Below are positions 11,849 through 64,000 of a stretch of DNA of 64,000 bases, piece by piece. The stretch lies in the NCBI GenBank assembly GCA_051294905.1, contig CM119378.1, positions 1,488,001-1,552,000 of the forward strand. Reading direction: 5' to 3'. The position numbers were made by a program, and so were the translations under genes. Under the pieces are notes generated by a model, which saw only the letters and a list, made by a program, of their open reading frames with translations, was not told where the DNA came from and did not search any database. The stretch is from Botryllus schlosseri (Eukaryota). The first letter of the stretch is position 1. Each line of letters opens with the position of its first letter.

Positions 11849-13789
11849 CTATCAGATAGAGTAAGTTGAGTGTGTTCAACTGATCATGATGTACATCGTT
11901 TTACTGATAGATGGAAAGTTGAATGCACTGGCGCGAGATGTAAAACAGATAAAAACGCAAAAAGAATGTAATTTGATTGCACTGGGCTGATATGTTCTCG
12001 TAAAAACATTTTTCAGGCTTGCATCGATGAATATGGATCTGGAAAAGAAGCTGCGTTAATAATAACTGCTCCGCATTTCCAGATTTTTCAGACTCTTTCT
12101 TGTCCATATTCCTACATCTTGGTGTCAGCTCAGTTCAGTATATGGCATGGCGCGTCTTTGTGACGTCGTTCGCACCAGATGTCCTGCAAAAATTTGCAAA
12201 TTTCGCGCGTGAGTCAATGCTCGCTGCAATCGAAAGTGGGCCATGCTAGCCAGACTTGGACAACTAGATAATTCCAGCGAAATGCCGGTAATCGAATTCG
12301 AATTTAATTTGTGAAATGTTTTTATGCTCTGCGGAATGAAAATGATACAGGCGAACTGTATAGTGTGAAACAAGCCAAGCTTGCAGTACAGACATTTTCC
12401 ATTTCATTTGAAGAGCTTCTTGGAGGTACGGAACTTCGATATACAATTAATTAATATATTCATATTGAAATAAACCCGAATATTCTCGGCGGACACTCGT
12501 CTGGTGTAATCAGGGTTACTATAGTTGCTGACGATTACTCCTGACGAGTGCCAACTTGAACTATGCGGGTTCATTTCAATGAATATACCATTCAATAATA
12601 ATTCCATTCTAATTTGGAAAAAAAACTGTAGCTATAATTGTAATTCTAATCCAATTTGGAATAGCTGAAAATTTTCTAGTTTTGTCCAAGTCCGATGCTA
12701 TCATTTCGTTGACCTCCGCGACTGCATCGCACGTGAATTTGTTGAGTCGCGGCAAGTAGTAGCTGCCTGGTCAGCATCTTCGTGAACACTCTTATGAACC
12801 ATTTCAGTCTACGATTCCAATGGCGTCTTTGAGGTGCGGGATTGCGTAAGGTCTGAATAGGAAAAGTCGAAATTTGCCTACACGAATCCGTGTTTACGTG
12901 GTCACAGAGGATTCCTACTTATAGACAGAATATCTAGGAGCCCATACATGAGGCACTATACGAGACAGTACTCGCCTAAATAATGCAATACAATCATCCT
13001 AAAAGCGTGTTTTTGGAGCCAAATTTTCGCACGATATTAGATATCATCAATTAAAATAAATACTGGTTTGGCGTTACTTCGCATCTATCAAACCCCATGT
13101 TTGCTACTTTAGTTGTTCACTAACGAATTCTTCGACGGACTCAAGTGAATTTTGTCTACACTGCAACCACTATAGATACGTTTTTAGAATATACTTTTAC
13201 GGTTTTCGAGGCAAAACTGTTTATATTATATTCTGGTATTTCATCTTTAGTTCATACGTTGTTCGTGTGGTGTTATCACGTAACCTCGATTTGTGACCTG
13301 ACCATTTCTTCTCCGTTCTGATATTTCATTGTTATTTCAAACGCCTTCTGTCTTGTTATACAATGTGAATTTCATTGATCGTGGTGCAAAGGGCGACGAG
13401 CGCCAAATCTTTCAGTTGGATAGACAACAACAACTTAAACTTTCACGTTTTCGATATTATCACGTTGAAATTAGTGAAATGGCATTCACAACTGGGTGAC
13501 GCGTCCCCGCACGTGAAACCATATTGTAATTTCAAAAATTACACACATTCATCGCATTTAATTAATATGATGTTAGTCGCGAATCTGCATATCTGTTACG
13601 CACAGCTCACAATCTCTACCAGAATAATCGCAAAGCATTGCGATTTACATACGCGTAGGTAGGTTACTTCTGATTTTCTAGCGAGACATGAAGTGAATAG
13701 TGTGATTGCTCGACAACGTAGTATGTTATTGATAGATGTTCAATCAATGTTCATTCAATCGCATCAGCACCAGCGCACAAAACGGCAAG

Positions 13790-14075
13790 ATCAATCAATC
13801 AATCAGCCTTTTTTTATTGATATTTTCATGATTTCGAAACACCACAAAACTGCGACACAACGAAAAGATAGGAAGTTGTCGAAACAACTTGAAATAGTCT
13901 TTGAGATCAGACACCCATCTTGGCCTAGAGGCGAAGTAAAGAAGAGGCATGTATACTGAATGAAAAGTAAAGCAGAGAATACAAGACGCAAGCGACAAAA
14001 TGAGGTAACATGTGGCGGAAGGCGAGATCGATGTTAGGTCGTGGTCCGGTAATCCTGAAGGCTGACTAGTATTTA
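13790..14075 (-). mobile_element. 3'-end relic of the same LINE group, (TTGA)n tail
   Basis: Shares gtcgtggtccggtaatc, cacccatcttggcctag and gaaaagataggaag with 21621-21900. Confidence 0.85.
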
Positions 14076-14289
14076 TTTAGAAGAAATTGCGAATTCCCAG
14101 TAATCTAATTCTAATCTAATTTGTGAAATGTTTCCATGCTCTAATTATAATTATGATCTAATTCGGAAAAGCTGAAAATTTTCTAGTTATCCAAGTCTGG
14201 TAGTTGTGCTTCGTTGACGCGCGTGTAGCGAACGTGCGCTGTTGACTCTGAGGTGAAATAGTCGTTGAAATTGGAGGGACATTGACAGC

Positions 14290-14470
14290 AATGGAACTGA
14301 TACATAAACTTGGCAATTTCTAGCTTCCTCAATCCTCATATCTTCGATGTTTAGAACACCAAATCTTTTGAGTAGCGATTTATCAGTTGCACATCCAGGC
14401 CCCGTGGGGCTTTGGCAATGATACGGATGATTCGATGTTCAAGTTTTTGCAGTGGGTCAATCGTATCATG
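14290..14470 (-). mobile_element. LINE ORF2 C-terminal relic
   Basis: Encodes PLQKLEHRIIRIIAKAPRG, homologous to 22140-22300. Confidence 0.8.
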
Positions 14471-16090
14471 AATCGAGCAAGAGGAAGGGCTGGATTCACA
14501 TCGCACGCGATCGAAGGTTAATTTCGTTCAAACGTAATACTTAGCCACGTTAATTCCCACTTGATCTAGCTTGAGCTTATCGAGAAACGGTCAAATCGTC
14601 AGAGACAAAGAAAATCGTGTTATTGACAGAGATGTCTTAATTTATCGTATAACTACTTCCGATGCAAGTCTCTTACGTCACTCTTTTAGCCCATTATTTC
14701 GATATTTTCCCACTCCATGACCATCATGTCTCTTCTCAACGTTTTATTAGACTTCGTCAAGTCGCTTCGATGCTATCCTATATTTCCGTAGCATCGCAAT
14801 GTTGTGAGGTTACCACAGATAAATATATTGGTAATTCGAACGTATTATCATTCTAAAACACAAATATGTACATTAATAATAATACCTTGAGAGGTGTCGC
14901 TGTCGCATTAACATTAACAAATAACAGAGTAACCGCGGACGACAATGATCCATGGTAATTGGTAATGTATCGAGTACGTATGGCGTCACAATCAACAAGT
15001 CTAAAATTGGAAGCGTGGAGGTTCTATTTGGACGCCCGGCTTTGCCAGTGAGAAAATGGAGCCCACTAGAAAGTATAAAGTAGCCATTTAAGGTGATCTG
15101 GGACCGACCAACGATATTTTATTATTGTTATTTTATGAAGTTATCGTTGATTCCGGGTAGTCCATATAAATAAATAGAAGAACCACAATGTGCTATTTGG
15201 GGTCACATTGGCGTTCGTTTTAGTACAAGGAAGTTTCTCAGGGCCGGATGATATTTTTATTATAACCATAACATCAAGACGGATGTAAAATTTGCGATAT
15301 TTCCATTTTACGTGTATCGTCTATCATCCATAGTTACAATGGCTGATTAGTCACGTTATTTACAGAATGAATTTCGTTTCTTCGCTTTTGGATTATTCGA
15401 TTTATACCGGGGTACATTTCCAGCTACTGGTTGCTAACTGATCTGGAATTGTATCTATAGTTATCCATAAATGTTTATCGGCCTGTATGGATCCGAATAA
15501 TCTTTGCAGAGGACAAGCAACGCAAGGTCATCGGATTTTCAACTCCCAACTCGATTGCATGTTATAGCTTCAGACTCCTTACATGTATCATGTACGATTG
15601 TACGCGGTGCTGCTATCTTATCGGATATGACACACGAGATATGCAGGTCATGGGAATTCCTCAGCGGTGGAGATCTGTCTTGCTGAGTTATTGGTTTCTC
15701 AGGGTCAAACTTTCGGAAATAATCTGTCATGTTCACTGCACAGTGCACACTGCACGTCATTTATCGCCAGAGATCCACGAATATTTACGCAAATTTGACC
15801 GACTGTATTGCAGTGATTACGACAAGCTGTCAAATTCGGATCGTACACATCTGCGAGTATCCTCGTATGTGATCTCACAAAGCGCTTGATGCGCGTCGCC
15901 CAAATAAGTTTCTGTGGACCAGTGCCTGCACTTCACAGAAGACATTGTGTCAATATCATGCATCAAAAGAAATATCGGTATCGCCCATTAGTGGTTATAC
16001 AACATCGACCATTTTTGCGATATCTCCATACAAATTGTTGGGTTTGAATCATTTTCACTCATTGACTGGGTGTTAAAGCACAATTTAGTA

Positions 16091-16627
16091 CAGATGCGGG
16101 CAGCTTAGGGCCCGCAGGATTTTAAGCTGCCCGAAAACAGTTTCCGGTGTGTACATGATAATGTGGCCCGCGGCCACTGTCTGCCGCAATACCCCAATCC
16201 TTGCTTGTTGCGTCAAACTGTGGTGACTGTAGGTTATTCCTTATTTTCTTTGCTCATTTATGCGTCACTGAATAAATCGAAGTTTGCCAACCTGAGAAAG
16301 ATGGCTGATACTACTTGTTCAATGTTCATGTTCGGGTCTACATACATTCGCGAGCAAAAAAAAATTCGACCATGAACATTAAAAGTACAAAGCTGCGTTC
16401 CAACCTAACTGATGTTCCAGTGCAGTGCATCTATTGACGTATACCCTACTTTAATAAATTCATTGAATACTGTTTTGGTCCGTATGCTTTAAACTTTACA
16501 TTAAATGCGATATATTCCTGGTATAGGTGGATGAATCAGCGATTACTGTATCGATTCAGGAATCCGGCCCGTCAAGTACTTAATGTTCGCACATCAGGCT
16601 CTCGGACTGGAGAAGTTGCCAGCCCTA
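16091..16627 (+). mobile_element. Internally deleted Buster/Charlie-type hAT element
   Basis: TSD atttagta / atttagca; residual transposase C-terminus KFANLRKMA..MFGSTYIREQ; homologous to 53426-54119. Confidence 0.8.
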
Positions 16628-21115: not shown

Positions 21116-21620
21116 ATTACTGCGATAAGACAGTTCTTCAAAAATGAAGCATGGAGACAGTAATTGGATTGTACCCGAATTCAAAACTAATCGCTTTCGC
21201 TAATAGTGTCCCAATGGCTGTACTTAACATTACAGCAAGCTGACTTGTACGCCGGAATTCAAGGGCCGTCTTCGAGTGCTATTCAACGGCTCTGGCTATC
21301 CAAACATCAAATTGATCGCGAGAACAAATACACGCGCACATCGCCAATCTATCATCCGTGAATTTCTGAATAGAAACCGTCGGCTGTTGCTAGGTAGCCA
21401 AAAGCCAAGCGCAGGGTGTAAAATGAAATTTGTAATGTAAACAAGCCCGGGAAAGCCTTCTAATTTTAAAAATAAGCGAAAAGCGGAGACAGAGCGACAT
21501 CTGCTGGAAATCAGTTCTTCGTCGGCCACAGATAATGTGTTTGAAGAACTCTTGGCGGTACAGAACTTTAAGAAATGCATGTGCGATTATGGAATTTGAT
21601 AGTGTGATATTCAGTGTAAC

Positions 21621-23078
21621 ATCATCATCATCATCATCATCATTGGTTTATTAGCAATTTTATCAGTTCAATACACCACAAAAATGCGATACAATGAAAA
21701 GACAGGAAGATGTCGAAGCGACAAGGAGTAGTCTATGGAATCTGACACCCACCTTGGCCTAGGCGATGTAAAGAGGAGGCATGCACACTGAATGAAAGTG
21801 AAGAAGATAGTATAGAAAAAGAATGCGACAAGAAATAGGGCGGCATGTCATGGGAAGCGAGATCGATAGGTCAGTCGTGGTCCGGTAATCTTGAGGATGG
21901 ACTGTATTTATTTAGTAGTAATTGCTTGTATTTCGACTTGAATGTGGACATGCTCCTCGACTGTCGGATGGCCGGCGGGATACTGTTCCACACATCAGGT
22001 ACGGCATATTTGATGGAGCGATGATCTTTTCGGTCGATCATATGATATTTGGACGACGTGGACGCGCGTGTGTTGTACTTGTGCGCTTTTGATTCAGAGG
22101 TAAAGAAGTCATTGAAATATTCGGGGCAACGACCGCAGTGAAACTGATACATAAACTTGGCGATTTCTAGTTTCCGCATATCTTCTATGTTTAGGACGCC
22201 GAATCTCTTCAGCAGCGACTTATTGGATGGGCAGCCAGGCCCCTTTGGGGCCCTAGCTATGATTCGGAGTACTTTATGCTGTAGTTTCTGCAGTGGCTTG
22301 AGTGCAGTTTTACTGGCAGCCCCCCCAACAGAGGATGCCATAGTGTAACTTCGATTGGATTAAGGATTTAAAGAGTATCAGAAGAACCCATGCTGGCATG
22401 AAGCGCCCAAGGCTGTAGAACAGGCCGCACTTCGGTGATAATTTAGTTTCTAGGGACTGAATATGACTCTTCCAGGACATGTTCGAGTCCAGTAAAACTC
22501 CGAGATATTTGGCATTATCTGTGTTGGAAACGGGCTGACCAGCGATATTAACGGTTAGGTTATTTTTTGAATTTACTGTCAGCAATTGCGATTTCGAGGC
22601 GTTTATGCAAAGGTTGTTCTGGGCCGTCCACTCATGGACTTTGGGCATTTGGTCACCAGTCAGGGCATCCAGCTCTGCCGTCGAAGATGCGGAAGAGAGG
22701 AGGTGAGTATCATCAGCGAACAGTGTGGTGTTCAATGAGGAGGTTTCAAAAATGTCGTTGACATATAAGGTGAAAAGGACCGGTCCAAGTACTGAGCCCT
22801 GGGGCACACCACAGGTCACCGGGTGAGGAGAGGACAAGGTGTCTGAGATCGCAACCATTTGTTGGCGTCCAGTGAGGTAACTTTTCATGAGCTCAAGTTG
22901 TGGGCCCCGAAGTCCGTAACGCGCCAATTTCGAGATGAGAATTTTATGATCTACGCAGTCAAACGCTTTTTTTAGGTCGAGAAAAATGCTACATCCCACA
23001 TTTCGCTTCTCCGAGATATCATAGTACTGTTCGGCCACTGTTAGGAGGGCATGAGCGGTTTGGTGTTTGTTTCGAATT
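21621..23078 (-). mobile_element. 5'-truncated CR1/L2-group LINE: reverse transcriptase, ORF2 C-terminus, 3'UTR and (ATG)n tail
   Basis: FLDLKKAFDCVDH, GVPQGSVLGPVLF, LFADD and AKYLGVLLD motifs in ORF 22310..23038; one frameshift in a G7 run (22320-22326) links to ORF 21871..22341 (HKYNTR, WNSIP..FKSKYK); (CAT)8 at 21621-21644 is the 3' tail. Confidence 0.95.
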
Positions 23079-29586: not shown

Positions 29587-32500
29587 ATGGGGTCCGTTCT
29601 TATCTCGTATCTCGTGTATGGGATGCTGCTATTGGCTGATGCAAAGAAAAGTAGGTGCTATAATATTGTGATAGCATTGATTGCTAGCTATTACTTGATT
29701 TGTTGATCTCGGCGTCGTTAGTATACTTGATCAACTTTAGCTTTCGCCAGTTCTCTATCATATCGTCCGTGTCATGTCGCGTCAATCAATTTCAATGTCT
29801 GTGGTCGGTTTCTTGCGATCCATACATTTGAAAACCATGTTCAATTGCTGAACTATAGGCTGATTATTTATTTTTAAATTATTTCATTTGCCTTGATCTT
29901 TACAGGACTGAATAATTTAATTGGTGTAGTGATCCTCTTGATGGATGCATTGTAGCAAAGCGTCACTGTTTGTGACCTTCCGCATGATTCGTGGCAGTAT
30001 TGAGATTTTGACCAGTGCATACTGGTGTTAAGTTGATTCAACTTGAGTCACTTTGATAAATGAAGTTGACTTGACCGACTCAGTGCTTTAGAAATATGGA
30101 TTGACGGGTGACCCGAAGTGAAATTTTCAAGTCATTATCATTGGTATCAACTGAATCAGTGTATACCTGCCGGCGGGTGCTTCTTATATAGCAGCCAGAC
30201 ACCTAACAATGTTTACCTTGATCACCAATGAATGATTCCTATGAACATGTCAAAATTTATAAAGATCAAAATTAATTATTTTTCGTGTTAGGATTAGAGA
30301 TGATAGTGTTGAGGGTTAGAGGTGTGGGATGATGGGGTGAGGGTATTAGTGTCGGAGGTGGGTTTTGCGAATATTGTAAGATTAGGGTTGTGGCCGGGAA
30401 GGGTATTATGGCTGGCGTTAGTGATACAATACTCCCAACCCGAATGTTAGGATACCCTAACCCACCTCCAACCCTAATAACCCTCACCCACAACACTGAT
30501 ATCCGTCATTTCCAACCCTAATCTTATGATACCCTAACCCCCCTCCAACCCTAATTTCCGTCAACCCTCACCCCAGCGCGAAAATTAATTTATTTTGACA
30601 TTTAGAAATTTTGACTTGCTCATGAAAAACATTTATTGGTGTGGTGAATATTGCTAGATGTATGACTGCCTTCGAAAAAGAGACTTAGGCCTATACCTGA
30701 AGGCTATGTTATGTCACCGGTATAGTTATCAAGTTGAAGTAGTTATGGTTTTTAGACTGTAGATATCTTACTTTGAATCACTTGTTGGGGTGACCGTGCA
30801 TTTAATTGCAGTCCTGGTAAACGTTTATATAGTTTTTCAAGGTATTCTTCTACATCAATTTGGTGGGTAGTCCTGTGCTGCAAATATCACAATATATGGA
30901 CCTACTGCAGAGCAATGCATAGCGAATAACTGTTTTGTGTTTGATTTGTGTGGGCTTACTTAGCAACAGTTTGATCGCTGAGTCAGTTCGACCTTAGCAA
31001 TTGTATGTTATTCTAGGATTACCATGTGTCCTCCTATTTCAAGAAATCTATAATGTTCTCCTCCGACACCCAAAAGTCCCCTTTTTTTGCAGTTCATCCA
31101 CTTTTATAGCTTTGAGAGTCGGGCGACCGTATAGAGACAACTAAATACGCCATAGTGGATGTGAAATCTGGGTTTCGACAGCAAGGTTGACTAAAATAAC
31201 GGTCAACTACAACCGATTATATGTGGGGACGGGTCTTTCGGCAGTCTAGTCGGAAATTTGACCTTTTTTTAGTCAGCCCATCAATATTAGCAGACAAAAT
31301 TTCAAATCCATATTAATGAATGCTGCGTAATCTTGACAATACATGTCGTTGATCTATTATATATTGTCCTGCTTGCATATCTTTTCATTCTTTAGGTTAT
31401 AAATGCTCGGAAAATCCCGACAAGCAGTGCAGATTCCCGTTTACATATGAAGGAAAAGTCTACAATGAATGTGTTGATGGTTGGGATTATTGGTGCTATA
31501 TTGATGATGCCGAAAATTATGAATATTGCAAATTATGTGAAGGTCAGTGAAGATTATCTCATTACAACTGCCGATACAGTGAGTGATCCTTATATGTGAA
31601 TGAGAGCCAATGAGAGCTCATCATCTGAACTGTGGTAATTATTCGTAGGCCTTTGTATAAGTCCTCCCCGTTTTGCATTAGCTAATGCTGTGGTTCTCAC
31701 CTATTCAGCTAGGAGACCAGTATATTTTTAGACAAATTTTGCGGACCGGTGCACCTTGAAAAAATATACATTACCAAAAAATGTAATTACGAAAAATGTA
31801 TGCACCTCAATATCAAACATCGGAAATTTCAATGTAATGACAAATCTGCAGCTGGTTTTTGATGTTACATGTGTTAATCTTGTTCTATTGAAGTTTCTGC
31901 AAAGCCAAGTCAGGTTCTGGCTCGTTTTATTGATATTTTTATCATTTCAATACTCCGTAAGATTTCAATGAGATGAAAAGATAGGAATGTGTCTGAATGA
32001 CCTGGAGTAGTCTTTCAAGATAATGATATAAAATGTGCAAGAGATAAAAATGAAGTGGCATGTGACGGTAGGCGACGACTAAATGTCATATCTTGATAAT
32101 CTTGGTAATCTGGAGTGTACTCATTCTGAAGAATCTGTTTGTGTTCTGGCTTCGATTGTTCGGTTTCTTTTGAAAGAACTGACTCGCCTGTTTGCTAGCC
32201 TCTATTGTGCTGCCGAATGCCCCTTACTGCTGAATTCAAGGAATTTTGTTGAAGAAGTCTTTCCAACTTTCAAATATGACTGGCTTTGAACGAGTTGTAA
32301 TCTACTTTTAAAATCTTTCGGTACAACACTTAACAGCATTGTGACGTAGGCCAAAACAAAAGTACTCCACAAATTCTATATGGCAACACGTTTTCTCGAT
32401 CAATTAAAAATTGTATATTGCATTTCTCCTGTCAATGGTTTTTTTTTTTAAATTTATGGCATTTTGCAATCAAGCTGTAAAAAGTAGGCGACAATTAAAT

Positions 32501-41500: not shown

Positions 41501-44500
41501 TGGTCAGCAAATGGTAGAAAATTGGAAACAACATTGTATGATAAATTTATAAGCAAAACAAAGTTGGGAAAGTCAATATCCCGATTTGGCTGTACCGTAC
41601 TTGATTTCATCCAATTCTTTTTTTTGTTCCAGTAGAGTGGACGTGGCTACATGATAATTTTTCAAAATTTTCAGTAAAACGGGCTCGTGCCCCCCGGGTT
41701 GGGACCCCCGCTATAAACTGATGTGAAATTTTTCAGAAAATGAAGTTGCCCCTGAAAATCCGATGACCACCAAAAGCCCCACCACTGTCCTCTCCTCAGC
41801 AAGGCCCGTCGACGAAAGGCTTTCAAGCACCACAAAGAAAAGGATATTGTCTACAGTTGCGTCGGTGATATCGTCAGAGAGTCCCTCCCCCAGTACCCAA
41901 TTCTATTCGCCTAAATCAAAAGTTTCACTGACGACATACAGTGATGCAAAGCCGAATTCTGAAAGGCAGCAGATGTCTTCGACCACAGTGGCTCCTGAAC
42001 AGATCAACTCCACCCCCGAAAAGATCCTTTACGATCCTGCGGTTTCAAGAGCTTTCATCACTACCAGGCCCACTACTACGGAGCTTGATCAGAAGGAGAT
42101 TGCAAGTTCAGCCAAGCCCGAACCTACACCCCTCGTAGAGATTCCGATTACCCCGAAATCCAAGCCTGCAACCGAGTCCTCTCCTCCTACCCAAAGCCAA
42201 TATCAAGGTGTGTCAAGCTGTCTGTAACAGATGGTAGATTGTGTTGGTTTGTGTTGTGGTCGGTAGCGCACTGGCTTGCATCAGCATGTGTTGTTGTGTT
42301 CACTACATGTCGGTTCTTGGGTTTGGTGAAATCGACTACCCTATATTGATTCGATTCGGAATCGTTCATGTTTGAATGTTGTAAAAAAAGTTCAAATAAG
42401 CATCTTTTATCCGACCTCAAGGTATATAATTAGAGTTCTACATCACGTTAAGATAATTTTGCATTTTTTGACTTACCTATTTCATTAATGAGCATGTAAT
42501 TTTAGTCCTCGAAAAACTCGAATCGTTGGAATACTCTATTGAGATTCGAGTATTCGGATGATTGCGCTCAGCCCTAGTTATTATATTCCCTACATGTCGG
42601 TTGGTGTAAAGTTGAAATATTACCAACTAATTTTATGGTCTCGCCAAGATTTAGTCAGCAACCAAGTACTTTTTACTGCAGATTATGTTTGGGTCTTTTT
42701 TGCCTAATTTGGGTGCGCTGAATCCGAATTTGGACATTTGTTTTCTCTCGCGTCGCGTTTTGGAGATAGTCTATCTATTGGTGGGTGGCGGTCAGTAACT
42801 TTTGCATTTTCATAGTGCTCAAGTAGATTTTGCGTTCTTGTCTTTTTCTTGTGTTTTTTGACTACTTCTACTTAGCAGTTTTTAAGGCAAAGCCACTAAC
42901 ATTTTAGAGTTTTCATTTGTGAAGGGGAAAGTAGTTTTGTGGTACGCTTGCATCGCTTTTATGAGTGAAATTTACCTGACAACTGAGCGAACGCTCAAGA
43001 CGTGTACCGATATAGTTGGTTGACGGTCTCCCAACTAGCGGATTTTGAAAATTGAGTTGTTCTAATCCTAGTTGTAGTTGTGGGTTTTCAAAAGTCATTC
43101 GTTTTAGACGTGGATTTTGAAAGTATTAGTACCAATTCTATTTGCGTATTTTCAAAATCCAGTAGTTTTTTCAAGTCTGGAAGGAACCCTGTATCTTGGT
43201 AACTGAACCATTTCTGAATATTGCACCTATTTGTAGTGTGATTTTGTATCGGCCACAAAGATGCATCCTGTGATTTCAAATGTAGGCAACCGCTTAAAGT
43301 ATTCGACCCATCCACCGAATCTACTTTTTGATTTGAGCGCGAGTATTTTTCGTACCTTTATTTTCTACTTGCACTTGAAGTAGTTTTGAACTGTCTTCGA
43401 AACTGCTACTTCTACTTTTAATGGAGTAGAAATGCACTGCATCACTTCTAGTTGAGTAGCGACGAAGACTACTTTGACCACGTCTGGTTTCAACAATGCA
43501 CTGTTTCATTTTTTTTCGTTCTATCTGATTAAAGAAGACATCGCGCCAACATTCTTTGTGGAATGTGGAGATCGGATATTATTTTCAGAAATGAGAATAA
43601 CTTTGTAACAACGATCTCAACTTCATCTCATTGATTTCCAGATGAGGAAGAAAGCGTGCAAGTTTTGGATTCGCGAAATTTGAAGACTGCAAACATACTG
43701 GCGGTGTCTACCACGGATGAAATTTCAACGGGGATGACAACCACGCAGAAAGCTATTGATTTGAGACTGGTCAAAGTCCCGACGCATCGCAACTCTGCCA
43801 CTGATAACTACAATCAAGATGAAGGTATGCGTTGCCGTCTGACTGGGTTGTAATGACTCGACTCAAGTCGCAATTTTTCGGTGACTTCACTCGACTCGAA
43901 GGAGTTATGTGAGATTGACCAAGTCGCAAGGTTCCGAGTCACAAGTCAATCTCACATATAAAGTTTTGACTCGAGTCAAGTTAATCTTTTTCAATTCATT
44001 GCGACCCTACAGACCACCGCTGGTGGATGTCATGATCATATTTGTTGAGACATCACCGAGTTTCTACGCTTCTCAGATGGCGAAAAAGCCAACGGCAAAT
44101 CAGGCCACGTTACGATTATCCTCATCATCTTGTTGCTTCTGGTCATCATCACCGGCGTTTTTGTGATTGTTCTCTGCTTGCGAAGACGCCGTCTCAGGTT
44201 GGTTGGTTTTACTTTTCTCTACAAGTCTCTGGTAAAGATTATGGCGGGGCAAAATCGAGTGCCTTAGCGATTTACTTGAAACGATTTTTTCCTCAAATCC
44301 TACTGGCTACTTGATAAAATTGTTAGGTTACCCAATTGAAGCCTGCACACCGAATTTGGTTCAATTCCAACCGGTAGCCGCATTGCTACAGGAGAAGATA
44401 GGTTTTTATTTACTATAAAAATATGAATTGAAAAAATTTCAAATTTTTCTGTTCACCCCATGAAAGTGTTCGGCTGTCTATAGAAACGATGTTCACCAGA

Positions 44501-46092
44501 TTTGACTCAATTCCAACTATCGGAAGCGGAGTTGTTGGTGTCGAAAAATTTGGTGGTGCCCGTAAATACTATTTTATTCAAATCCAAAATTTTTCGACGG
44601 CAATAACTCCGCTTCCAGTGGTTGGAATTGAGCCAAATTTGGTGAGCATCGTTTCAATAGACAACTGAACAATTTCATGGGGTGAACATAAAAATCTGAA
44701 ATTTTTTTATTCATTTTTTTATAATAAATAAAAAACTTTCTTCTCATGTAGCAATGCGGCTACCGGTTGGAATTGAACCAAATTCGGTGTGCAGGCTTCA
44801 ATTAGCTAACCTAACAATTTTATCTAGCAGCCAGTAGAATTTGAGAGAAAAAGTCATTTTTAAACAACCCTAGTGCGCGCAGCTTTGTAGTACCTATTTT
44901 GTATACAACGATGCTACCAGTCGAGGTTTACAGCATTCCGCACGCCGTGGTGTTGTATAACACTATCGCAGGTATGCTTCTCGCAGATATATCAACTCTT
45001 TGCTTCAAGGAGTATATAATTTCAGTGAGATTGAGCATTAATTATTATCAACGAAAACAAGAGTTTCCATACTTTTTTTCACTGTGGAAGCCCCGGTTAT
45101 GATATGCCGTTTGACTTTGTCATGTGCCTGATACTTGGATTTGATTTACCAAACAGAGCTTCGAAACATCAAGAGGCTGAGATCGGTGAATCGGGCGACA
45201 ATCTGCTGAAACAGAACGGAAGCGACAAAGTGAGTTTTTAACGGAAGGGGTCAAATCCGTCGGTGTTTGCTACTCGGGTAGAAGTAAAAATAAAACCAAA
45301 AATGTCTACTCGATTACAGAAAGTAGGTATTTCCCCAGTCATTTCAAAACTACTACCAAGTAGAAGTAGAATATGGAGATCTTGGAGAGGTATTTAAGAA
45401 AGTAATTTTTAAAAGTAGATTTGGCCGATAAGTCACTTAGTTTTAGCGGTTAATTGTAGGCGGCTAACTTTTGAAATTGCGAGATGCGTCTTGGGATCGA
45501 TGCACCATGGCTGATGGCAGCATATGTAGTCACTTTCGTCTAGTGATGATGAGAATTTCGCTAAAAAAAGTGATGTATGCTCATGCCAAAACTACTGTCT
45601 GCTTTACAAAATTCAAATGAATAGTATATTCATATTGAAATGATCCCGAATATTTTCGGCTGACACTCGTCAGGGTTAATCATCAGCAACGAGAGTCGGC
45701 CGAAGATATTCGGGTTCATATCGATATGAATATAGTATTCAATTGTCTGTTGAAGTTCTGTAACTCCAAGAAGCTCTCAAAAACCGAAATGATAAAACGT
45801 TGAGTAGTTTCGCCTACAAAAAGCAATGCACGTTATTTAAAACCTACTTCGAGTACTAGCAAAAAGTAGCTCAGTATTTCGGTTTTTATCGAATGTCAAA
45901 AATTTATCGACGCTTCAGGCTCGATGCATCTTTTATTACCGCGGGCTTCATTTTCAGAGCGTTTCCGCCGACGGAAGTCAAGAGATGCAGCCACTAAACG
46001 AGAACTGTAGCAAAACAACACCAGGCGACTACGTCGTCATCAAAGATGGGACTGATTCCAAAATAGATCGCAAGGCCACCGTGACTGTTTGA
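29587..46092 (+). CDS. Gene A: type I membrane glycoprotein, SP-FN2-mucin-FN2-mucin-TM-cytoplasmic tail (~657 aa); exons 29587-29650, 31396-31542, 34073-34324, 38714-38782, 39390-39689, 40394-40552, 41737-42207, 43642-43824, 44077-44197, 45157-45229, 45958-46092
   Basis: Signal peptide MGSVLISYLVYGMLLLADA; FN2 motifs CRFPFTYEGKVYNEC..YWC and CQFPFEHGGKQHYEC..YWC; S/T/P-rich exons; TM VTIILIILLLLVIITGVFVIVLCL followed by RRRR; tail ends GDYVVI...KATVTV-stop. All junctions are GT-AG and in frame (ectodomain phase 1, TM exon phase 2, then phase 0). The small 38714 exon is the least certain, and a split into two genes is not excluded. Confidence 0.75.
30190..30670. repeat. Fold-back element with degenerate TTAGGG-like left half and CCCTAA-like right half
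   Basis: ~100-bp outer inverted arms (caccaatgaatg..caaaatt versus aattttgac..tttattggtg); inner G-rich then C-rich repeats. Confidence 0.75.
31396..31542 (+). CDS. Gene A exon: fibronectin type II domain 1
   Basis: YKCSENPDKQCRFPFTYEGKVYNECVDGWDYWCYIDDAENYEYCKLCE; tttag acceptor, gtcagt donor, phase 1-1. Confidence 0.85.
31900..32330 (-). mobile_element. LINE 3' relic
   Basis: aatgagatgaaaagatagga..ggagtagtc..ggtaatctgga motifs. Confidence 0.65.
32566..32830 (+). mobile_element. tRNA-derived SINE with (CT)n tail
   Basis: A box (gatagtgtaatgg) and B box (gggttcgatccc), no closed cloverleaf, ~170-bp body starting GGTCATACCAAAGAC, simple-repeat tail. Confidence 0.85.
32965..33480. mobile_element. 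hAT MITE (TAGGGCTGGGC family); partial copies at ~2760-2897, 10130-10290, 17218-17640 (minus), 42400-42577, 56710-57095
   Basis: TIR TAGGGCTGGGCA / TGCCCAGCCCTA; perfect TSD ATTATTAC. Confidence 0.9.
33640..33830. repeat. Interspersed repeat (CCAAGCTTGGCTTGTTTCGCAC..ATTAG-rich); copies ~12250-12410, 19290-19480, 46375-46555
   Basis: Shared motifs in the same order in four places; class unknown. Confidence 0.6.
35302..37036 (+). mobile_element. Fossil piggyBac transposon (degenerate PGBD-type transposase)
   Basis: TTAA then CACTAGAAC ... GTTCTAGTG then ttga; subterminal GTGGCTTTTTTGACGC (twice left) versus GCGTCAAAAAAGCCAC (right); remnants NRFMEVMSFL, KYLYKGVSYLGK, YNETKPG..QVARQYS and RRPVHVF match recalled piggyBac motifs, with many stops and frameshifts. 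Confidence 0.85.
37326..37716. mobile_element. Kolobok-like MITE
   Basis: ~60-bp TIRs AGTGGCACTGCGCTCTAAAA; TTAA at the right end, left target degenerate. Confidence 0.6.
40394..40552 (+). CDS. Gene A exon: fibronectin type II domain 2
   Basis: SRCSMNKEYPCQFPFEHGGKQHYECIYSSWTRNYWCKNKEPLTHFAYCEICD; gacag acceptor, gtatgc donor, phase 1-1. Confidence 0.85.
41737..42207 (+). CDS. Gene A exon: mucin-like Ser/Thr/Pro-rich stalk
   Basis: 471-nt open phase 1-1 exon matching ORF 41763..42227; tttttcag acceptor. Confidence 0.8.
44077..44197 (+). CDS. Gene A exon: transmembrane helix and stop-transfer
   Basis: GEKANGKSGHVTIILIILLLLVIITGVFVIVLCLRRRRL; ctcag acceptor, gttggt donor. Confidence 0.85.
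44262..44875. mobile_element. Fold-back element with ~290-bp inverted arms; fragment at ~38840-38990
   Basis: gcctgcacaccgaatttggttcaattccaaccggtagccgcattgctaca and its exact reverse complement near 44748-44800. Confidence 0.85.
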
Positions 46093-52500: not shown

Positions 52501-55500
52501 TGCTGGTTCTGGACATTCAACAAAACCTGTCTGTTCAACAGCAAAGAGTTGAACAGCAGATGTAACGGCCACGCGCATTTCATTAGCTTCCACGGCCCCG
52601 TAGTTTTGGAATTGCGCGCGCCAACAAAGTCGTTTACAAGCTGGCGTCCGCTTTTTGGGATCAAATACTCGTATATTACTCCTGAATCTTCCTTGCTGTT
52701 TAGTTGTACCGGTAAGTGGAGAGGTGGCGCGGATTCGCAGTATTAGAATTGTGGACGTATCCAGTCCAGAGGTGAGAATCCAAATTATCCTCAATAGGTT
52801 CTATCACAACGTATTGATTTGCAGTCACAAAACTTCGTGCATCATTATGCAGAAAAACAGTCTTTTTTATATATAGCATACGACAGAACTTTGCCCATAT
52901 TAAAACAACTCTAGTTATCGGGAAAAAAATGCAGTCACCCATTGGCGGTATAACCGGTAATGGTAACCGGTTTGCTATTGTCGTGAAATTTCACGAGGTG
53001 GCTATACAGAACCTGCTTAATCTCCTCATTCAGTATAGTATTTCTTGCGCGTACCAAGAGATGTGGAGCGGATTCTGTTGCCATTTTCTACTTGATTTCA
53101 GCTCTAAATGCGTGTCCGAAAGTGGACAAAGGATCGAATTCCGCAGCGGACAACGCGACGATGACAGTTCCCAGCGTGGGAGAGACGAAGTGCCCGCATT
53201 TGTATGCAGGTGCTCTCATTGCTGTGGATGTGTTTTTATCGATTATACTCCTCATCCAGGGCGTAATGTGAGTCATTAAGTATCTTTGATGATAATCGCA
53301 GAACTACACAAATCCAAAGACCTCGTTTCAATTATACTTAACCTTTACGAGTTATCCATTCATTCGTTCATTGATATTTATTGACTCCTCCAATCGAACC
53401 CGCACGGCGCCGCCTTGACCTAGAACAGGGCCGGGCAGCATACGGCCCGCGGACCGGACCTGACACGTGACGGAATTTTGAGCGGCATTTATACAGTTTC
53501 CGGTAATACATGATGTGGTCTGCGGTCTAGTCTGTCGCAATCCCCCAGTATTAGCTGGCTACATCACATTATGGTGACCGTAGGTTATTTATTAGGTCTT
53601 TGTTTTCTTTATATTGAATGTGTCACTGAATGATTTCAAGTTTGCCAACGTGAGAAAGATGGCCATGACACTAATTGGCCCGTTCGGGTATACATACATT
53701 TTCGAGCATGTTCGACCATGAACAATAACATCAACTTGGATACGAACACGAACCAGCTAATAACATTAACAAGGCGATGCTGCTTTCTAATTGGTGCATT
53801 TCAATCTAACGGATGTTAATGCGCTGTCTTTGCTAAGGGTTTTTACGTTTGCCGAGTTCTAAGAACTTGTTCACAACTTTGATCGACCACAGATATCTGA
53901 TAGACTCCAACAGCTATAATCTAAGTACATTAAGTCGGTAAATTAATTGCATACTGTATTGGTCTCTATGCTTCAAACTGAAGTTTACACATTAAATACG
54001 ATTTATTCCTTGTATAGGTGGATGAATACGCGATTAATGTATCGTTTCAAGAATCCGGCCCGCCAAGTACCTAATTTTCCCGTATCAGGCCCGCCGAAAG
54101 TAGATGTTGCATGCCACTGACTTAGGACATGTAAATAAGACACGTGTATATAATGAATGTAGAGTAAAAGAATATGAAATGGGTTCCCAAATTAGGGGTC
54201 CGCTTCGAGTTGACCTTTTTAGTAGTCTCTGCATAGTCGCCTTACACTGAAAACAACGAGAGATGACGGATTGCAAAAAATAGAGTATGTGGGCGTCCTC
54301 GGAGGACGTTTTAGTTTTTATTGAAAAAGAGGACAAACCCTCTTTAAAGAGGGCATATGATATATGAGATTGTACTTTTACCGAGACTTATAGGCAAGAC
54401 GTAGTATTTATTTCTCAAAAATATAATGGTGTACTCAACATACATGCTGAATTGCTGTTTTAAAAAAGGATTTCAAACGAATTGTCGTACCTTCTTATAT
54501 AGTTGTTATTGCAAACAGTGTTCGGCGTTCTGTGCTTTTGTACATGCGATGATCTGTCGCAAGTTCTCTGGCGCAATTTCGAATTTAACAGACCTATTAT
54601 CTGGACGTTCGTATATATTTCAAAGATATTTTGTGTATAGAATTTCTCGAACTCGTAAAAGATATCATTCTTCATTGTCAAAAGTCAAGTGTAGGCCTAC
54701 CGCAAAGTATTCGTGGGCTGAATCTGAAAAATGAACTTGATCTGTTGCTTATTTGTCTGTTTTTATAATTTTGCCTGCAGCTACTACCAAGGAAATGTGA
54801 AACATCATCCGACTCAAAGTGGCAATTATACTTCTGTTTTACTTGCCGACAAACATCTCTTCTTTATGGGTGTTGAAAACGGGGTTGTAATCTAACTTTT
54901 ATAGTTTTTACTCGAATCAAGTCGAGTCTCGAATCAAGTCGAGTCAATCTGACTCACCACCGAGTCAAGTCCGAGTCCAAGTCGGGGAGTAGAGGGTCGA
55001 TATCGAGTCCAAGTCATCGCGTTCACTGTTCAGTTTTGAGTTCAATCCGGTTCAACCCACTTTTTCAACTCTGCTCGAGTGATTTAGAATGGCTCGCATT
55101 CATAACATCGTATTTTTCTTCAGTCGTAAGAGTTTCTGACTCCCATTTTCCAAGTATCAGGACTGATAGACGAATTGCCAATAATGTGGCGACTCCTCTT
55201 CTGTAGAAGTTACAATGAAATGTCTGTCGTGGCCGTCCTATAGTCTCGGGTCATACGACTTGCTTCGAGTCATGTAAACAATAGACGGGTCAATACAAAA
55301 ATTGACTCGAGTCGAACTATTTTACGCATTTAAAAAAAGGACTTTAGTTACATCGAGTCACCAAAAAATTGTGACTCGAGTCATTACAACAAGGGTTGGA
55401 AATATGGTAACCCTCAAATTCAGTATGCTTGTGAAATCTTGAAATCTGGCTCACTGTGAGTCGCGGTAATATTTGCCCGACAATCAACTCGATTTTTGCG

Positions 55501-55829
55501 TTTTCTTTCCAAGAAATTCGCGTTGCTGTAGGCCTACTCCAAGTCCAAAGTATTGTCACCTCGATGAAGAGGGTAAGGGCGAGGTGATGTCACGCGATGT
55601 ACAAGACTCGGCCGGAGACCAGCCTTCGTCTTGTCCGGACAGCGTCAGCCAGGAGACTACAGACTGTCACGCGGGAGGCGATAGTGCCCAATCATCGCAC
55701 GCCGATGTCGTGATGCAGCACGCGCCAGCAGTTGAGACCGCCGTTAGTTCCGCGAGTGACATAATTGCGGTCGATGACGCAGCGGCTGATAAGCCGCTGG
55801 ATGCGAGCGAGTCCGGGCCGAGTGGATAA
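49524..55829 (+). CDS. Gene B: divergent CUB-domain single-pass membrane protein (~327 aa); exons 49524-49566, 49725-49913, 52457-52711, 53102-53262, 54781-54818, 55532-55829
   Basis: SP MFTFTLISLAVAMTG; CUB-like C..DGILDVPGLY....CWNI...VLIEILDL...RCNG..ISFHGPVVLELRA...FGIKYSY split over two phase-1 exons; hydrophobic AGALIAVDVFLSIILLIQGLL then PRK; GC-richer acidic tail with KYCHL. The last two junctions are less certain (weak gtggca donor). Confidence 0.65.
50351..51017. mobile_element. Non-autonomous DNA element with GGGCGATT TIRs
   Basis: ta then gggtgattt ... aaatcgccc then ta; reverse-complement homolog at 63212-63996. Confidence 0.75.
53426..54119 (+). mobile_element. Second copy of the 16.1-kb hAT derivative
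   Basis: Colinear similarity to 16091-16627; TSD acctagaa / acttagga. Confidence 0.8.
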
Positions 55830-59584: not shown

Positions 59585-60600
59585 ATCTATCCACCAAACC
59601 AGACATCACGACACTATCAGAGCAACAAATCTCCATCGTCGCATATACTGAATAAGTAATAACAGAACTATAATTAATGTACTGTCATGTTAATTAAATG
59701 TTGCTTTTATACCATTCCATCATACCAACTACCAGTTACTGTATAAACCAGTTTTTAATTGAAATAACAACCCCTGATGTAGGCTATTAAATTTTTCAGA
59801 AGATGAAGTCACTCCTGAAAATCCGATGACCTACTCCACTAGCACAAGTCCCACTATCCACACCTCAGCACGCCCTGTTAGCGAAAAGCTTTCACGCATT
59901 CAAACGAAATGGATCTCATCTACAGTTACCACAGTGAGATGTTCGAATATGATAATATCTGTAAAGTATATTTCTGCTTTCATTTCGTTTTGGTGTTCGC
60001 GTATAATGGCATTTTTACACTAAACACCGAATTACCAAGTACTGAAGGCAGATACGGAACAGACAGTCATCATATTTCAATCACGCGCCTTAGATGATCA
60101 AGATTTTAGACCTACAAGACTAGATTAAGGCTATGCTGGTGTATATTTGATGCTGTTATTTTGGTATATATGGTGCGTCGACTACATTTGTCATTTCAGA
60201 CCAGGCCGATATTATATTTCATGATTCGTGATCTGATTGCTGTCGATTACCCTTGAGGAGCGTTAACCGAAAATGTTCAATATGAATATATAATTCAATT
60301 GCATAATATATATTATCATTGCAATATTTGCTAATCGTTTGTCTGATGTGTTTGCGAGCTTCGAGTCCCGTGCTTTGATCTGGTCATCTACGGTCTCGTC
60401 ATCACACGCGTTTTGTCGATTGTGAAAACGGATCAGACAACTCGTGAGTATCGGAAAGTATAGAAAGCGTATGTTTTCAGGAAGTTGACTACGCGTACTC
60501 ACTACTCATCGTGACACCCAGCGAATGAGAAACAGTATACCGAAGACGGCTCATCGACGTGCATTCAACCGACTGCGTCTATGTAGCGATGAATGTCAGA
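59585..60600 (+). pseudogene. Decayed gene-A-like fragments
   Basis: From 59800, atttttcag then EDEVTPENPMTYSTSTSP..SARPVSEKLSRI is clearly paralogous to gene A 41737 (ENEVAPENPMTTKSP..SARPVDERLSST) but has no phase-1 donor. Weaker hints: S/T piece 59585-59655 ending in a stop; ENGSDNS plus gtgagt near 60425-60452 resembling gene A QNGSDK plus gtgagt. Confidence 0.5.
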
Positions 60601-61522: not shown

Positions 61523-62603
61523 ATGACCGTACACGCTTTAGCAGTTCTTATGTTAGCGACAGGTAGGATGCACGTAAAACAAATGCCATGTTACAATACC
61601 CATACGTGTTACCTACACAGCAGACTCTAAATCGATCAAGCATCCACTAAGGTTGTATTTAAAACAAGTAGCGCTTTAAAGCACTTTGCTTAAAACGTGT
61701 TTTAAACAATGTTTTAAATAAATGACATTTTAAAAATGATGTATTTTTTAAAAAGTTGTATAATCATTTCATAATTGCGTAAATACTTCCGAAAAAACGG
61801 GCGGACTGAGCCTTCGGATGACTTGCGCCAGATGTAGTAGATATAGGCTACCATATGGAATGGTTCAAACCCTACAAATTGTCGCAAGTTCAACGGTTAT
61901 ATAGTACGTAGATACATATCCGTAGAACGGAATGGGTGCTATGATGATGACCGCTGACCGTAAAAATATTAGATAAATGTGTAGTCCTGCTCAAATATTT
62001 TTTGTCGGTTTAAGAGGGTATTCAAGGAAAATCTTTTTCGTCGAAGGAGCCATATTGACTCTGTATTTTCTGTTGTTGTTAAGAGGCCATAAAACAATTT
62101 CAATCCATGGTGACGTCATAGTTGAAGATTCTTGACGTCATGGCTAACAAACAAAACATAAAATAAAAAACATTCTATAAACAAGGGCCCTGTTATAAAT
62201 ATGTTTGTTTTGAATTTATTTTTGTCTTAAATGCAACCCTACCTAAAGCGTGATGTTTGGTTCATTGACTTTTCCACGTCGTTTCGACTCCGTCCTATTT
62301 TACCATTGTATCCCAATCTTGGAGTGTTTTGAAATAATAAAAAAGTTTCATCATCTGAATCTGCATCTTGTATTCACAATCGTTCTCAACTTTAACGACA
62401 AGGTGGACTCTCTGACAATATTGGCAGTTGTAACTTCCACGAGCGCGTGAATACGACAGAGGGAGCAATTAATGGACCCCGAGGGAATGAGTTGGCTTGT
62501 TGGATCTTCGAACCACCGATCGAAAGCCCGAAGCAAGGACTTTTTATCCAAGTGAAAAGTGTCGATTTTAAAGAATACCCAGACGTCTCTTTCTACTTTG
62601 AAG
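61523..62603 (+). CDS. Gene C (5' part; continues beyond window): paralog of gene B; exons 61523-61562, 62403-62603
   Basis: SP MTVHALAVLMLATG with phase-1 gtagga donor; CUB first half CNFHERVNTTEGAINGPRGNELACWIFEP...GLFIQVKSVDF...FYFEG with the same exon boundaries as gene B 49725-49913. Confidence 0.65.
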
Positions 62604-63211
62604 GTAATAATCTCGGTGAGGTATGGCAACGCCAGAAAAATTGGATTTAAATTGTCGCTGTGGAATCAAAGTAGCTCATGTCCATTTTAAACATTCAGAG
62701 AAAATAAACTCTTTATCAAGTTTTTATTTTCTTTCGGCCATATCTTGGCCATGGTTAACTTTCAAACAATGTGAAAAACATAAACATGGCCGAAAAATAT
62801 GAAAATTTCACAAAAATATGAATTCTATCAGTTTAACACCCACCAAAAGGATCTCAAAATATGAAAAATGAAAATGAACTTTGATTCCGCCGCGACGAAA
62901 TTTTCAAATCCAACCCTTGTTCCTGATATAAACGCGAAATTTCGTATTCTGTAAGTTCCTTATTTTTTCGAGACACGCCAATATCCAAGTCTTAATCCGG
63001 TAATGAGTAAAATTTATTTGAAAGTCGCATCAATTTGGAAATTACTAGAGATTCCATGTCTTACGCCGACTATTTCCAAGCGTGCATCCCCTAGTTCAGT
63101 GGTTCTTTAACCGGCGTTCCGCGGAACAAGGCTCCTACCAGGAGACAGTCGCAGGGGTTTCGCGGAGCTCAAGACAGACACTTATAACTCATACATATTT
63201 TGCAATGATTT

Positions 63212-63996
63212 GGGCGATTTTGTTTTACCCAAAAACGGAATATTTTGATCTAAATAAATTTGAATTTTGACATTTTTTGACCTAAAAACACTTAATTTTG
63301 ACCAAATTTTGACACCACGTATGCAAATAAGATGTTTTCACACAGTGTTAAAATTGAACCACTTATCTCCATTTCTGGTTGGAACTGTCTGTCCCTGCGA
63401 AGTAGTTTGGCATGAAAAAACGTTTTTGACTTGAAAACTGACAATTTTTACATGAAAAAATGTTATTTTACCTGAATCTAGCCCTATGAAGAATTCCAGT
63501 AGTTACATCACGTATTATGGTGGAAATAATAAAAATTTGTTGTAATAAAATGAAAGATAGGCTACTTTCCTATATTCTAAGTAGCTTGTCATGAACGGAG
63601 AAAGAAGGTTCAACAGAAAAAGTTGTGGGCTGACAACACTGAAGTTGTGCGTACACTGCTGGTGACACACCGTGCTGCTTCATTCTGACAATGTTTTCTA
63701 CATCACAATTTTTCATCATGCGCTACTTGATATAAGAACCAGGCAATGTCCAAGCAGTCTTGCTTCAGTTAGGATATTGCGGTACGTTGACCATAACACC
63801 ATGTCAACCTATTTGTTTCGGTTGACCGTTTATGATTTGGAATGAGCAGACAATGAAGCGTCCACAACGGTAGGCTATAAGCTGTAAAATATCAAATGAA
63901 AAGTTCACCGACAGTGCAAAATCTACGATAGGCTACAAACGTAATGCAGGGGTCAACAAAATTATGACTTTTTTGACATGTCAAAACGAATCGCCC
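63212..63996. mobile_element. Second GGGCGATT-TIR element, inverted relative to 50351-51017
   Basis: gggcgattt ... gaatcgccc; interior is the reverse complement of ~50380-51010. Confidence 0.75.
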
Positions 63997-64000
63997 TAAT

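What the first reader, a model, noticed from the sequence alone, without database searches (positions are those of the whole stretch)
11849..64000. Cell-surface receptor cluster apparently nested antisense inside a >52-kb nesprin intron
Seen: the most 5' nesprin exon found (11736-11848) begins with a splice acceptor in phase 0, the other nesprin introns are only ~0.1-2 kb, and I found no further minus-strand spectrin exons up to 64,000. Knowledge: the matched segment lies in the spectrin rod, far C-terminal of the N-terminal CH domains of nesprin-1. Inference: the missing N-terminal exons lie beyond the window, so genes A, B, C and the A-like relic, plus a dense TE field, sit in one giant intron that acts as an expanding accessory gene nursery.
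Basis: partly seen in the sequence, partly recalled or inferred. Interest (0 to 1): 0.75.

Follow-up and report, generated by a model that had tools for sequence, protein, structure and literature searches.

The report
Nesprin gene split by 0.6-Mb inversion
The supposed giant nesprin intron adjoins or lies inside a 0.6-million-base flipped block that separates the two halves of a sea-squirt nesprin gene, so the claim that receptor genes are nested in it is unproven and may rest on an assembly error or a real inversion.

Summary
Exon 11736-11848 (minus) has an AG acceptor in phase 0 and is spliced to 10861 in RNA contigs. Downstream introns are about 2 kb or less. No nesprin-like exon follows on the minus strand up to 64,000, nor in the next 200 kb. 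The gene is a true nesprin: the genome's only KASH exon lies 93 kb downstream on the same strand.

The missing N-terminal part is not simply further upstream. A relative's single mRNA (CH domains plus rod) bridges this exon. About 1,800 residues precede the exon in that mRNA. Those that can be placed, 13 exons, map colinearly to C8:2,074,175-2,109,013 on the PLUS strand. That is 609 kb away and points away from the window. The last of those exons ends in phase 0 (AAG|GT), which fits exon 11848.

So in this assembly nesprin is cut in two by an inversion-like rearrangement. One breakpoint lies in an intron that is also large (at least 14 kb) in another relative. As assembled, 11849-64000 cannot be spliced out as one intron.

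Whether the plus-strand genes (FN2/mucin gene A, B, C) are nested depends on a breakpoint I could not locate. I could not tell a real inversion from a misassembly. The "gene nursery" reading has no support.

The parts
11736..11848 (-). Nesprin rod exon: the first exon of the 3' half in this assembly, phase 0 at its 5' end
   Evidence: ag acceptor and gt donor. Joint to 10861 in RNA contigs X1 and X2. 74-85% identical to relatives' proteins P0003 and P0001.
10636..10861 (-). Next nesprin exon, RNA-verified
   Evidence: X1 contig record 1 covers 10636-10861 directly after 11736-11850. It matches residues 299-327 of the relative's mRNA ORF.
1..10635 (-). About 14-20 further spectrin-rod coding segments of the same gene; boundaries are approximate
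   Evidence: Open frames with rod-like composition. A rough splice-aware chain, which over-calls some exons. Homology to the relative's mRNA at 8473-8664 and 6628-6735. A weak PF25034 Spectrin_SYNE1 hit at 8452-8685.
11849..64000 (.). Stretch with no nesprin exon on either strand. It is either the left remnant of the interrupted intron, the start of the inverted block, or both
   Evidence: Composition scan. tblastn with P0003/P0006 and with the genome's own 5' exons. No N run in the window or in the next 200 kb.
11896..12182 (-). Last exon of a spliced transcript with no long open frame, ending about 48 nt upstream of the nesprin acceptor
   Evidence: Nine X19 raw reads show the joint 12182->14676 with GT/AG on the minus strand. 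The stretch is unique in the genome. No long open frame.
14677..14900 (-). Upstream exon of the same transcript; its 5' limit is approximate
   Evidence: X19 depth in 14500-14899 and a GTAAGA donor at 14676. The loose end at 14793 re-aligns at 14820-14840, so it is an allelic indel and not a splice.
21619..23074 (-). Young 5'-truncated LINE fragment with a reverse-transcriptase ORF
   Evidence: PF00078, 91.9 bits, on 22313-23077. At least 38 copies at 98-99% identity across the genome. Absent from the C179 copy of this region.
29587..46092 (+). Gene A (span taken from another scan note): two FN2 domains, Ser/Thr-rich exons, a TM exon and a short tail
   Evidence: FN2 at 31428 (25.5 bits, above cut-off) and at 40426 (19.6 bits, below cut-off). 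Ser/Thr-rich open frames at 34057-34455, 39377-39697 and 41727-42224, and a hydrophobic stretch in 44049-44264. The plus-strand G>C and T>A skew is weak evidence. No RNA or homologue evidence was obtained.
53102..55829 (+). Gene B candidate (span taken from another scan note); not verified here
   Evidence: The open frame 52987-53268 has a hydrophobic segment containing Asp. No Pfam hit.
59778..60020 (+). A-like relic
   Evidence: 57% identity over 49 aa to the gene A exon 41727-42224, E 1e-13.
62396..62647 (+). Gene C candidate exon; not verified
   Evidence: An open frame only. No Pfam hit.

Best explanation
The minus-strand exons at 1-11848 are the start of the 3' half of the genome's single KASH-domain nesprin gene. 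The exons for the preceding part of the protein (about 1,800 residues in a relative's mRNA: paired CH domains plus early rod) lie at C8:2,074,175-2,109,013 on the plus strand. That is 609 kb to the right, and they read away from the window. In this assembly the gene is therefore interrupted by an inverted block of roughly 0.6 Mb. One breakpoint lies in the intron between the exon ending at C8:2,109,013 and the exon at window 11848. The other lies just beyond C8:2,109,013. That intron was already the large one of the gene: it is at least 14.3 kb in another relative, where the one neighbouring intron measured is about 1 kb (0.07-2 kb in this window). The stretch 11849-64000 is partly the remnant of that intron and partly, or wholly, DNA that the inversion brought next to it. 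The plus-strand FN2/mucin and other candidate membrane-protein genes are ordinary independent genes there. Shown: the positions and strands of both halves, the splice compatibility, and the absence of same-strand upstream exons for 252 kb. Inferred: that a single inversion explains the layout. Unknown: whether it is a true inversion of the sequenced haplotype or a contig-level assembly error, and where the left breakpoint lies.
For: KASH (PF10541, 56 bits) occurs once in the genome, at C8:1,395,229-1,395,402 on the minus strand, 93 kb below the window. phmmer with the 37-aa exon found P0003, a Tara-type metatranscriptome protein of a relative, with 336 rod residues N-terminal of this exon. One ORF of the relative's mRNA contig L042 maps residues 41-256 to C8:2,107,035-2,108,998 (+) and residues 263-521 to window 11845, 10863, 8664 and 6735 (-). 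L042 overlaps L041 by 1,429 nt at 99.7%. L041 begins with CH (PF00307) and Spectrin_SYNE1, and its N-terminus maps colinearly to C8:2,074,175-2,084,537 (+) (the CH hit also). Seven colinear plus-strand exons lie at C8:2,104,849-2,109,013. The last ends ATTAAG|GTTTGT in phase 0, which matches the phase-0 start at 11848 and the two extra 'AG' letters by which the X1 and X2 contigs overrun the exon. The X2 contig has 664 nt upstream of 11848 that do not lie in 10500-16499. No copy of the 5' exons exists in the window plus 200 kb, and no second copy of the 3' exons exists elsewhere. The relative's genomic contig L043 has at least 14.3 kb upstream of the orthologous exon without the preceding exon.
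Against: Neither breakpoint was located. There is no N run in the window or in the next 200 kb, so a plain scaffold-orientation error with a breakpoint near the window is excluded. That leaves a true inversion or a rarer contig-level error. The unplaced contig C179 is colinear with window 15,753-31,876, so no discontinuity is visible there. The 664 upstream letters of the X2 contig were not displayed, so their identity with the C8:2.107-2.109 Mb exons is inferred and not seen. The 5' exons are only 20-44% identical to the relative's protein, though they are colinear, with E-values down to 1e-12.
Confidence: 0.6

Rival explanations
1. The window is truly inside one nesprin intron, and only a block carrying the 5' half (somewhere between C8:1,752,000 and just past 2,109,013) is mis-oriented in the scaffold. 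The real intron would then be at least 252 kb and up to about 575 kb, and genes A-C and many others would be nested in it.
For: Exon 11848 is contiguous, without any N, with 252 kb of upstream sequence, so a scaffold-level orientation error must have its left end beyond that. Small contigs are the ones most often mis-oriented (general knowledge). This intron is also the large one in a relative.
Against: Such an intron would exceed the gene's other introns by more than 100-fold. It would hold same-strand protein-coding genes, for example minus-strand TSP1 and sushi exons at C8:1,676,000-1,698,000, whose terminators would oppose read-through. The compositional skew of 11849-29500 is plus-like and not minus-like, which is weak evidence. 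No gap was seen, although the relevant stretch could not be fetched.
Confidence: 0.2
2. Lineage-specific gene fission. The inversion is real and fixed or common, so this sea squirt has a CH-rod gene and a separate rod-KASH gene. The rod-KASH gene starts from new 5' exons lying beyond 16.5 kb. The window would then be its upstream region rather than an intron of a full-length nesprin.
For: The contiguous assembly with no gaps favours a real arrangement. Vertebrate nesprin genes make CH-less, KASH-containing isoforms from internal promoters (general knowledge of SYNE1/2). The X2 contig's 664 upstream nt were not seen and could be new exons. A minus-strand spliced transcript starts near 14.9 kb.
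Against: The last 5' exon keeps an intact donor and the exact phase needed to join 11848. The contig overrun 'AG' fits it. No coding-like minus-strand exon lies in 252 kb upstream. The 14.9-kb transcript ends at about 11896 and was not seen joined to 11848.
Confidence: 0.12
3. The gene simply starts near 12 kb: a transcription start or a missed first exon at 12-16 kb, giving a truncated nesprin.
For: There is no upstream same-strand coding exon. The X1 contig begins exactly at 11850.
Against: The X2 contig continues 664 nt upstream of 11848, and none of it lies in 10500-16499. The exon has a canonical acceptor and its frame is closed by a stop just upstream. Relatives' mRNA continues N-terminally.
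Confidence: 0.03

Closest known systems
Giant nesprins (vertebrate SYNE1/SYNE2, Drosophila MSP300, C. elegans ANC-1)
   Same: N-terminal paired CH domains, a very long spectrin-repeat rod encoded by many small exons, and a C-terminal KASH exon. All three parts are found for this gene.
   Different: In this assembly the CH/early-rod exons and the late-rod/KASH exons lie on opposite strands, 609 kb apart.
Genes nested antisense in a large host intron (textbook case: EVI2A, EVI2B and OMG in an intron of human NF1; from general knowledge)
   Same: Plus-strand candidate membrane-protein genes lie next to minus-strand host exons, beside an intron that is unusually large in relatives too.
   Different: The defining condition, host exons on both sides on one strand, is not met in this assembly.
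Intron-breakpoint inversions that split a gene (for example the F8 intron-22 inversion in haemophilia A; from general knowledge), and inversion or orientation errors in chromosome-scale assemblies
   Same: Two intact gene halves in opposite orientation, with the break inside an intron and splice sites preserved on both sides.
   Different: No flanking inverted repeats or breakpoints were identified, and there is no evidence on allele frequency or phenotype.

Membership tests
Nesprin (KASH-domain spectrin-repeat protein) | C-terminal KASH domain on the same strand, downstream | tested here: met
   PF10541, 56.2 bits, is the only hit in the genome, at C8:1,395,229-1,395,402 (-), 93 kb below the window.
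Nesprin (KASH-domain spectrin-repeat protein) | Spectrin-repeat rod of the SYNE type | tested here: inconclusive
   Single exons reach only 16.3 and 12.7 bits for PF25034 (cut-off 35). Generic PF00435 gives weak hits near the KASH exon only. The orthologous mRNA of a relative carries PF25034, and the window exons align to it at 47-82% identity.
Nesprin (KASH-domain spectrin-repeat protein) | N-terminal paired CH (actin-binding) domains in the same transcription unit | tested here: not met
   CH exons orthologous to the relative's nesprin exist at C8:2,074,175-2,082,621, but on the plus strand 0.58 Mb away. In the assembly they are therefore not in one transcription unit. The relative's mRNA shows they belong to the same gene.
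Nested (intronic) gene arrangement | Host-gene exons flank the guest genes on both sides, on one strand | tested here: not met
   No host exon lies on the minus strand from 11849 to C8:1,752,000. The upstream host exons are on the other strand.
Nested (intronic) gene arrangement | RNA shows the host splice that spans the guest genes | tested here: inconclusive
   The X2 contig shows that some upstream exon is joined to 11848, but its 664 letters were not displayed, and the read tools were capped.
FN2-domain membrane protein (gene A) | Fibronectin type II domain | tested here: met
   PF00040: 25.5 bits (cut-off 22.2) at 31428; the second copy reaches 19.6 bits, below cut-off, at 40426.
FN2-domain membrane protein (gene A) | Signal peptide, TM helix, spliced and expressed mRNA | not tested
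   A hydrophobic stretch was seen by eye in 44049-44264. No RNA was laid beyond 16.5 kb, and no homologue was found in the metagenome scan.

The most novel reading that the evidence does not exclude
The inversion is real and common or fixed in this sea-squirt lineage. The ancestral giant nesprin has then been split into a CH-rod gene and an independently promoted rod-KASH gene. The window would hold the new upstream region of the rod-KASH gene, including a spliced transcript without a long open frame at 11.9-14.9 kb and neighbouring receptor-like genes.
Probability: 0.12. Interest if true: 0.6.

Novelty: new member of a known kind. Interest (0 to 1): 0.3.

Why it matters
For genome annotation, any gene model here will either truncate nesprin into two genes or invent a giant intron. 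The nested receptor cluster could be carried forward as biology when it may be a by-product of a 0.6-Mb orientation problem. If the inversion is real, it is a natural allele, or a lineage-specific fission, that separates the actin-binding head of nesprin from its nuclear-envelope anchor. That would be a useful natural experiment on LINC-complex function in a chordate. If it is an assembly error, it marks C8:1.50-2.11 Mb for correction.

Tried and rejected
1. Pfam CH and spectrin models run over the whole genome, to find the upstream exons on the minus strand near the window. None were there.
2. Fetching the gene's downstream 100 kb and more upstream DNA.
3. A search for same-species transcript-derived proteins spanning the junction. 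Only genomic or relatives' proteins came back.
4. The look-up of encoding contigs for P0003: not on record.
5. Two metagenome scans, one for the relative's exon preceding 11848 and one for a gene A homologue. Both were empty.
6. A comparison of a relative's 14.3-kb intron with the window and with the sequence after C8:2,109,013. Nothing is conserved.
7. Walking right from C8:2,110,498. Only TE matches appeared, with no gap and no window-like sequence up to 2,111,998.
8. Whole-genome DNA searches with window segments, looking for an inverted duplicate at the far breakpoint. These were swamped by young TE families. They did reveal the colinear contig C179.
9. Loose ends of reads: the one at 14793 is an allelic indel and not a splice.
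10. Strand compositional skew as a footprint of transcription: too weak to decide.
11. A home-made splice-chain predictor for the window's exons. It over-called exons (for example a TE at 11560-11667 that the RNA skips), so I used it only for rough intron sizes.
12. A literature search on nesprin in ascidians: nothing relevant.
Full report
LOCATION AND HOST GENE
The window is C8:1,488,001-1,552,000 of a 495-Mb genome. Another note of this scan calls the organism a sea squirt. Minus-strand open frames with spectrin-rod composition fill 1-11848. The genome's only KASH domain (PF10541, 56 bits) lies on the same strand at C8:1,395,229-1,395,402, 93 kb below the window. Weak spectrin hits lie between the two. 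The host is therefore a genuine nesprin, read right to left.

THE OBSERVATION
- On the minus strand a pyrimidine-rich tract ends in ag at 11850-11849. The 113-nt exon 11848..11736 opens in phase 0 and is followed by gt.
- Contigs of two runs from different studies (X1, X2) join 11736 to 10861 across a GT..AG intron of 874 nt, and X1 covers the next exon, 10636-10861.
- Spacing of the coding segments shows the introns below 11848 to be about 2 kb or less.
- A composition log-odds scan trained on the window's exons finds 13 positive minus-strand segments in the first 12 kb. It finds 0-1 per 12 kb over the next 252 kb (window plus C8:1,552,001-1,752,000, fetched). That equals the plus-strand background.

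IS EXON 11848 INTERNAL?
Yes. In run X2 an 815-nt contig maps its positions 665-779 to 11850..11736. Its first 664 nt lie nowhere in 10500-16499. A transcription start at 12-16 kb is therefore excluded for that transcript.

WHERE ARE THE UPSTREAM EXONS?
- phmmer with the 37-aa exon against 1.84 billion representatives gave P0003. This 394-aa metatranscriptome protein of a relative is 74% identical on the exon and has 336 rod residues N-terminal of it.
- Those residues hit nothing in the window plus 200 kb.
- A whole-genome search placed them at C8:2,104,840-2,108,998 on the PLUS strand.
- Re-alignment shows seven colinear exons at C8:2,104,849-2,109,013.
- The relative's mRNA contig L042 has one 521-aa ORF. 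Residues 41-256 map to those plus-strand exons, and residues 263-521 map to window 11845, 10863, 8664 and 6735 on the minus strand.
- L042 overlaps L041 by 1,429 nt at 99.7%. L041 is a 6.4-kb contig that starts with CH domains and Spectrin_SYNE1. Its N-terminus maps colinearly to C8:2,074,175-2,084,537 (+), including the CH exon already seen.
- About 1,800 residues thus precede exon 11848 in the relative's mRNA. The 13 exons that could be placed in this genome span 35 kb, are 0.58-0.61 Mb to the right of the window, and read away from it.
- The last of them ends ATTAAG|GTTTGT in phase 0. This fits the phase-0 start at 11848 and the two letters 'AG' by which both RNA contigs overrun the exon.
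- There is no second copy of either half.

WHAT THIS MEANS
As assembled, the two halves of nesprin lie on opposite strands, with their 5' ends facing each other across about 575 kb. The simplest repair is one inversion of about 0.6 Mb. One breakpoint would lie in the intron upstream of 11848 and the other just beyond C8:2,109,013.

That intron was already exceptional. In a closer relative's genomic contig (L029/L043, 82-85% identical on the exon) at least 14.3 kb upstream of the orthologous exon lack the preceding exon, while the next intron is about 1 kb.

I could not locate the breakpoints.
- No N run occurs in the window or in the next 200 kb.
- Nothing in the 3 kb after C8:2,109,013 resembles the window except old TEs.
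- Genome-wide DNA searches were swamped by young TE families.
- Those searches did show that an unplaced contig, C179, is colinear with window 15,753-31,876 at 82-96% identity and lacks 19,927-26,107. No discontinuity is visible in that span.

CAUSE
Because exon 11848 is contiguous with 252 kb of gap-free sequence, a simple scaffold-orientation error near the window is excluded. Three possibilities remain.
(a) A true inversion of the sequenced haplotype, or a contig-level error, with the left breakpoint at an unknown place to the right of 11849. I put this at about 0.6 together.
(b) A mis-oriented block holding only the 5' half. This would make a real intron of at least 252 kb that contains the window and many genes, including same-strand TSP1/sushi exons. 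I put this at about 0.2.
(c) A fixed fission into two genes, about 0.12.
The RNA contigs differ from the assembly by 2.6-5.8%. In exon 10636-10861 many of the differences are spaced in multiples of three, and site 11795 is a third codon position. The RNA animals are therefore a divergent lineage, and a lineage-specific or polymorphic inversion is plausible.

THE GUEST GENES
On the plus strand two FN2 domains are found, at 31428 (25.5 bits, above cut-off) and at 40426 (19.6 bits, below cut-off). With them are Ser/Thr-rich exons and a hydrophobic exon. A relic of one exon lies at 59778-60020. Genes B and C gave no family hit, and I have no RNA evidence for any of them. Whether they are nested cannot be decided. 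I estimate about one chance in three that they lie inside the intron in the colinear arrangement.

VERDICT
The sequence-level observation is right. The inference that the N-terminal exons exist outside the window is also right. The giant intron with a nested receptor nursery is not established.

Noticed in passing
window 11896-12182 and 14677-14900, minus strand: A spliced two-exon transcript with good GT/AG sites and no long open frame, seen in raw reads of run X19. It ends about 48 nt upstream of the nesprin acceptor and after an AGTAAA hexamer. It may be an intronic lncRNA or an alternative 5' or 3' end.
   Followed up: partly
window 21619-23074: A 1.46-kb 5'-truncated LINE fragment with an RT ORF. 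At least 38 copies at 98-99% identity lie on many chromosomes, so the family is very recently active. It is absent from the C179 copy of this region.
   Followed up: partly
G000:C179:1-10960 versus window 15753-31876: An unplaced contig is colinear with the window but only 82-96% identical, with a 6.2-kb indel. That is too divergent for an ordinary haplotig. It may be a very divergent haplotype, a second lineage in the sample, or a segmental duplicate.
   Followed up: partly
window 10636-10861 and 11736-11848: RNA contigs of the same species label differ from the assembly by 2.6-5.8% in these exons. In exon 10636-10861 many differences are spaced in multiples of three. Three alleles (C, G, T) occur at site 11795, a third codon position. 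This points to extreme polymorphism or a cryptic species complex.
   Followed up: no
window 12274-14099: Reads and contigs from other copies join 12273 to 14100. The stretch is therefore a 1.8-kb insertion nested inside an older, expressed repeat (12251-12680 plus 14100-14470).
   Followed up: no
window 35298-37038 and 32964-33480: Two more abundant repeat families. One is a 1.74-kb element with about 40 scored copies at 87-94% identity. The other is a 0.52-kb element with 40 or more copies at 91-99% identity. Both sit inside the span of gene A.
   Followed up: no
window 52987-53268, plus strand: An open frame with a short Cys-containing ectodomain and a hydrophobic segment carrying an Asp, reminiscent of DAP12/FcR-gamma-type signalling adaptors. 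No Pfam hit. It is the subject of another note of the scan.
   Followed up: no
C8:1,663,956-1,668,308 (L020:1956-6308), minus strand: A run of long open frames (572, 397, 223 and 312 aa) with a Gln-rich coiled-coil N-terminal part. It looks like a nearly intact LTR retrotransposon.
   Followed up: no
C8:1,676,332-1,697,661 (L021-L023), minus strand: Exons with thrombospondin type-1 and sushi/CCP motifs, suggesting a multi-exon secreted or membrane protein gene on the same strand as the nesprin 3' half.
   Followed up: no
G000:C18:590656-644397: Five identical weak hits spaced exactly 13,395 bp apart, indicating a tandem array of 13.4-kb units on C18.
   Followed up: no
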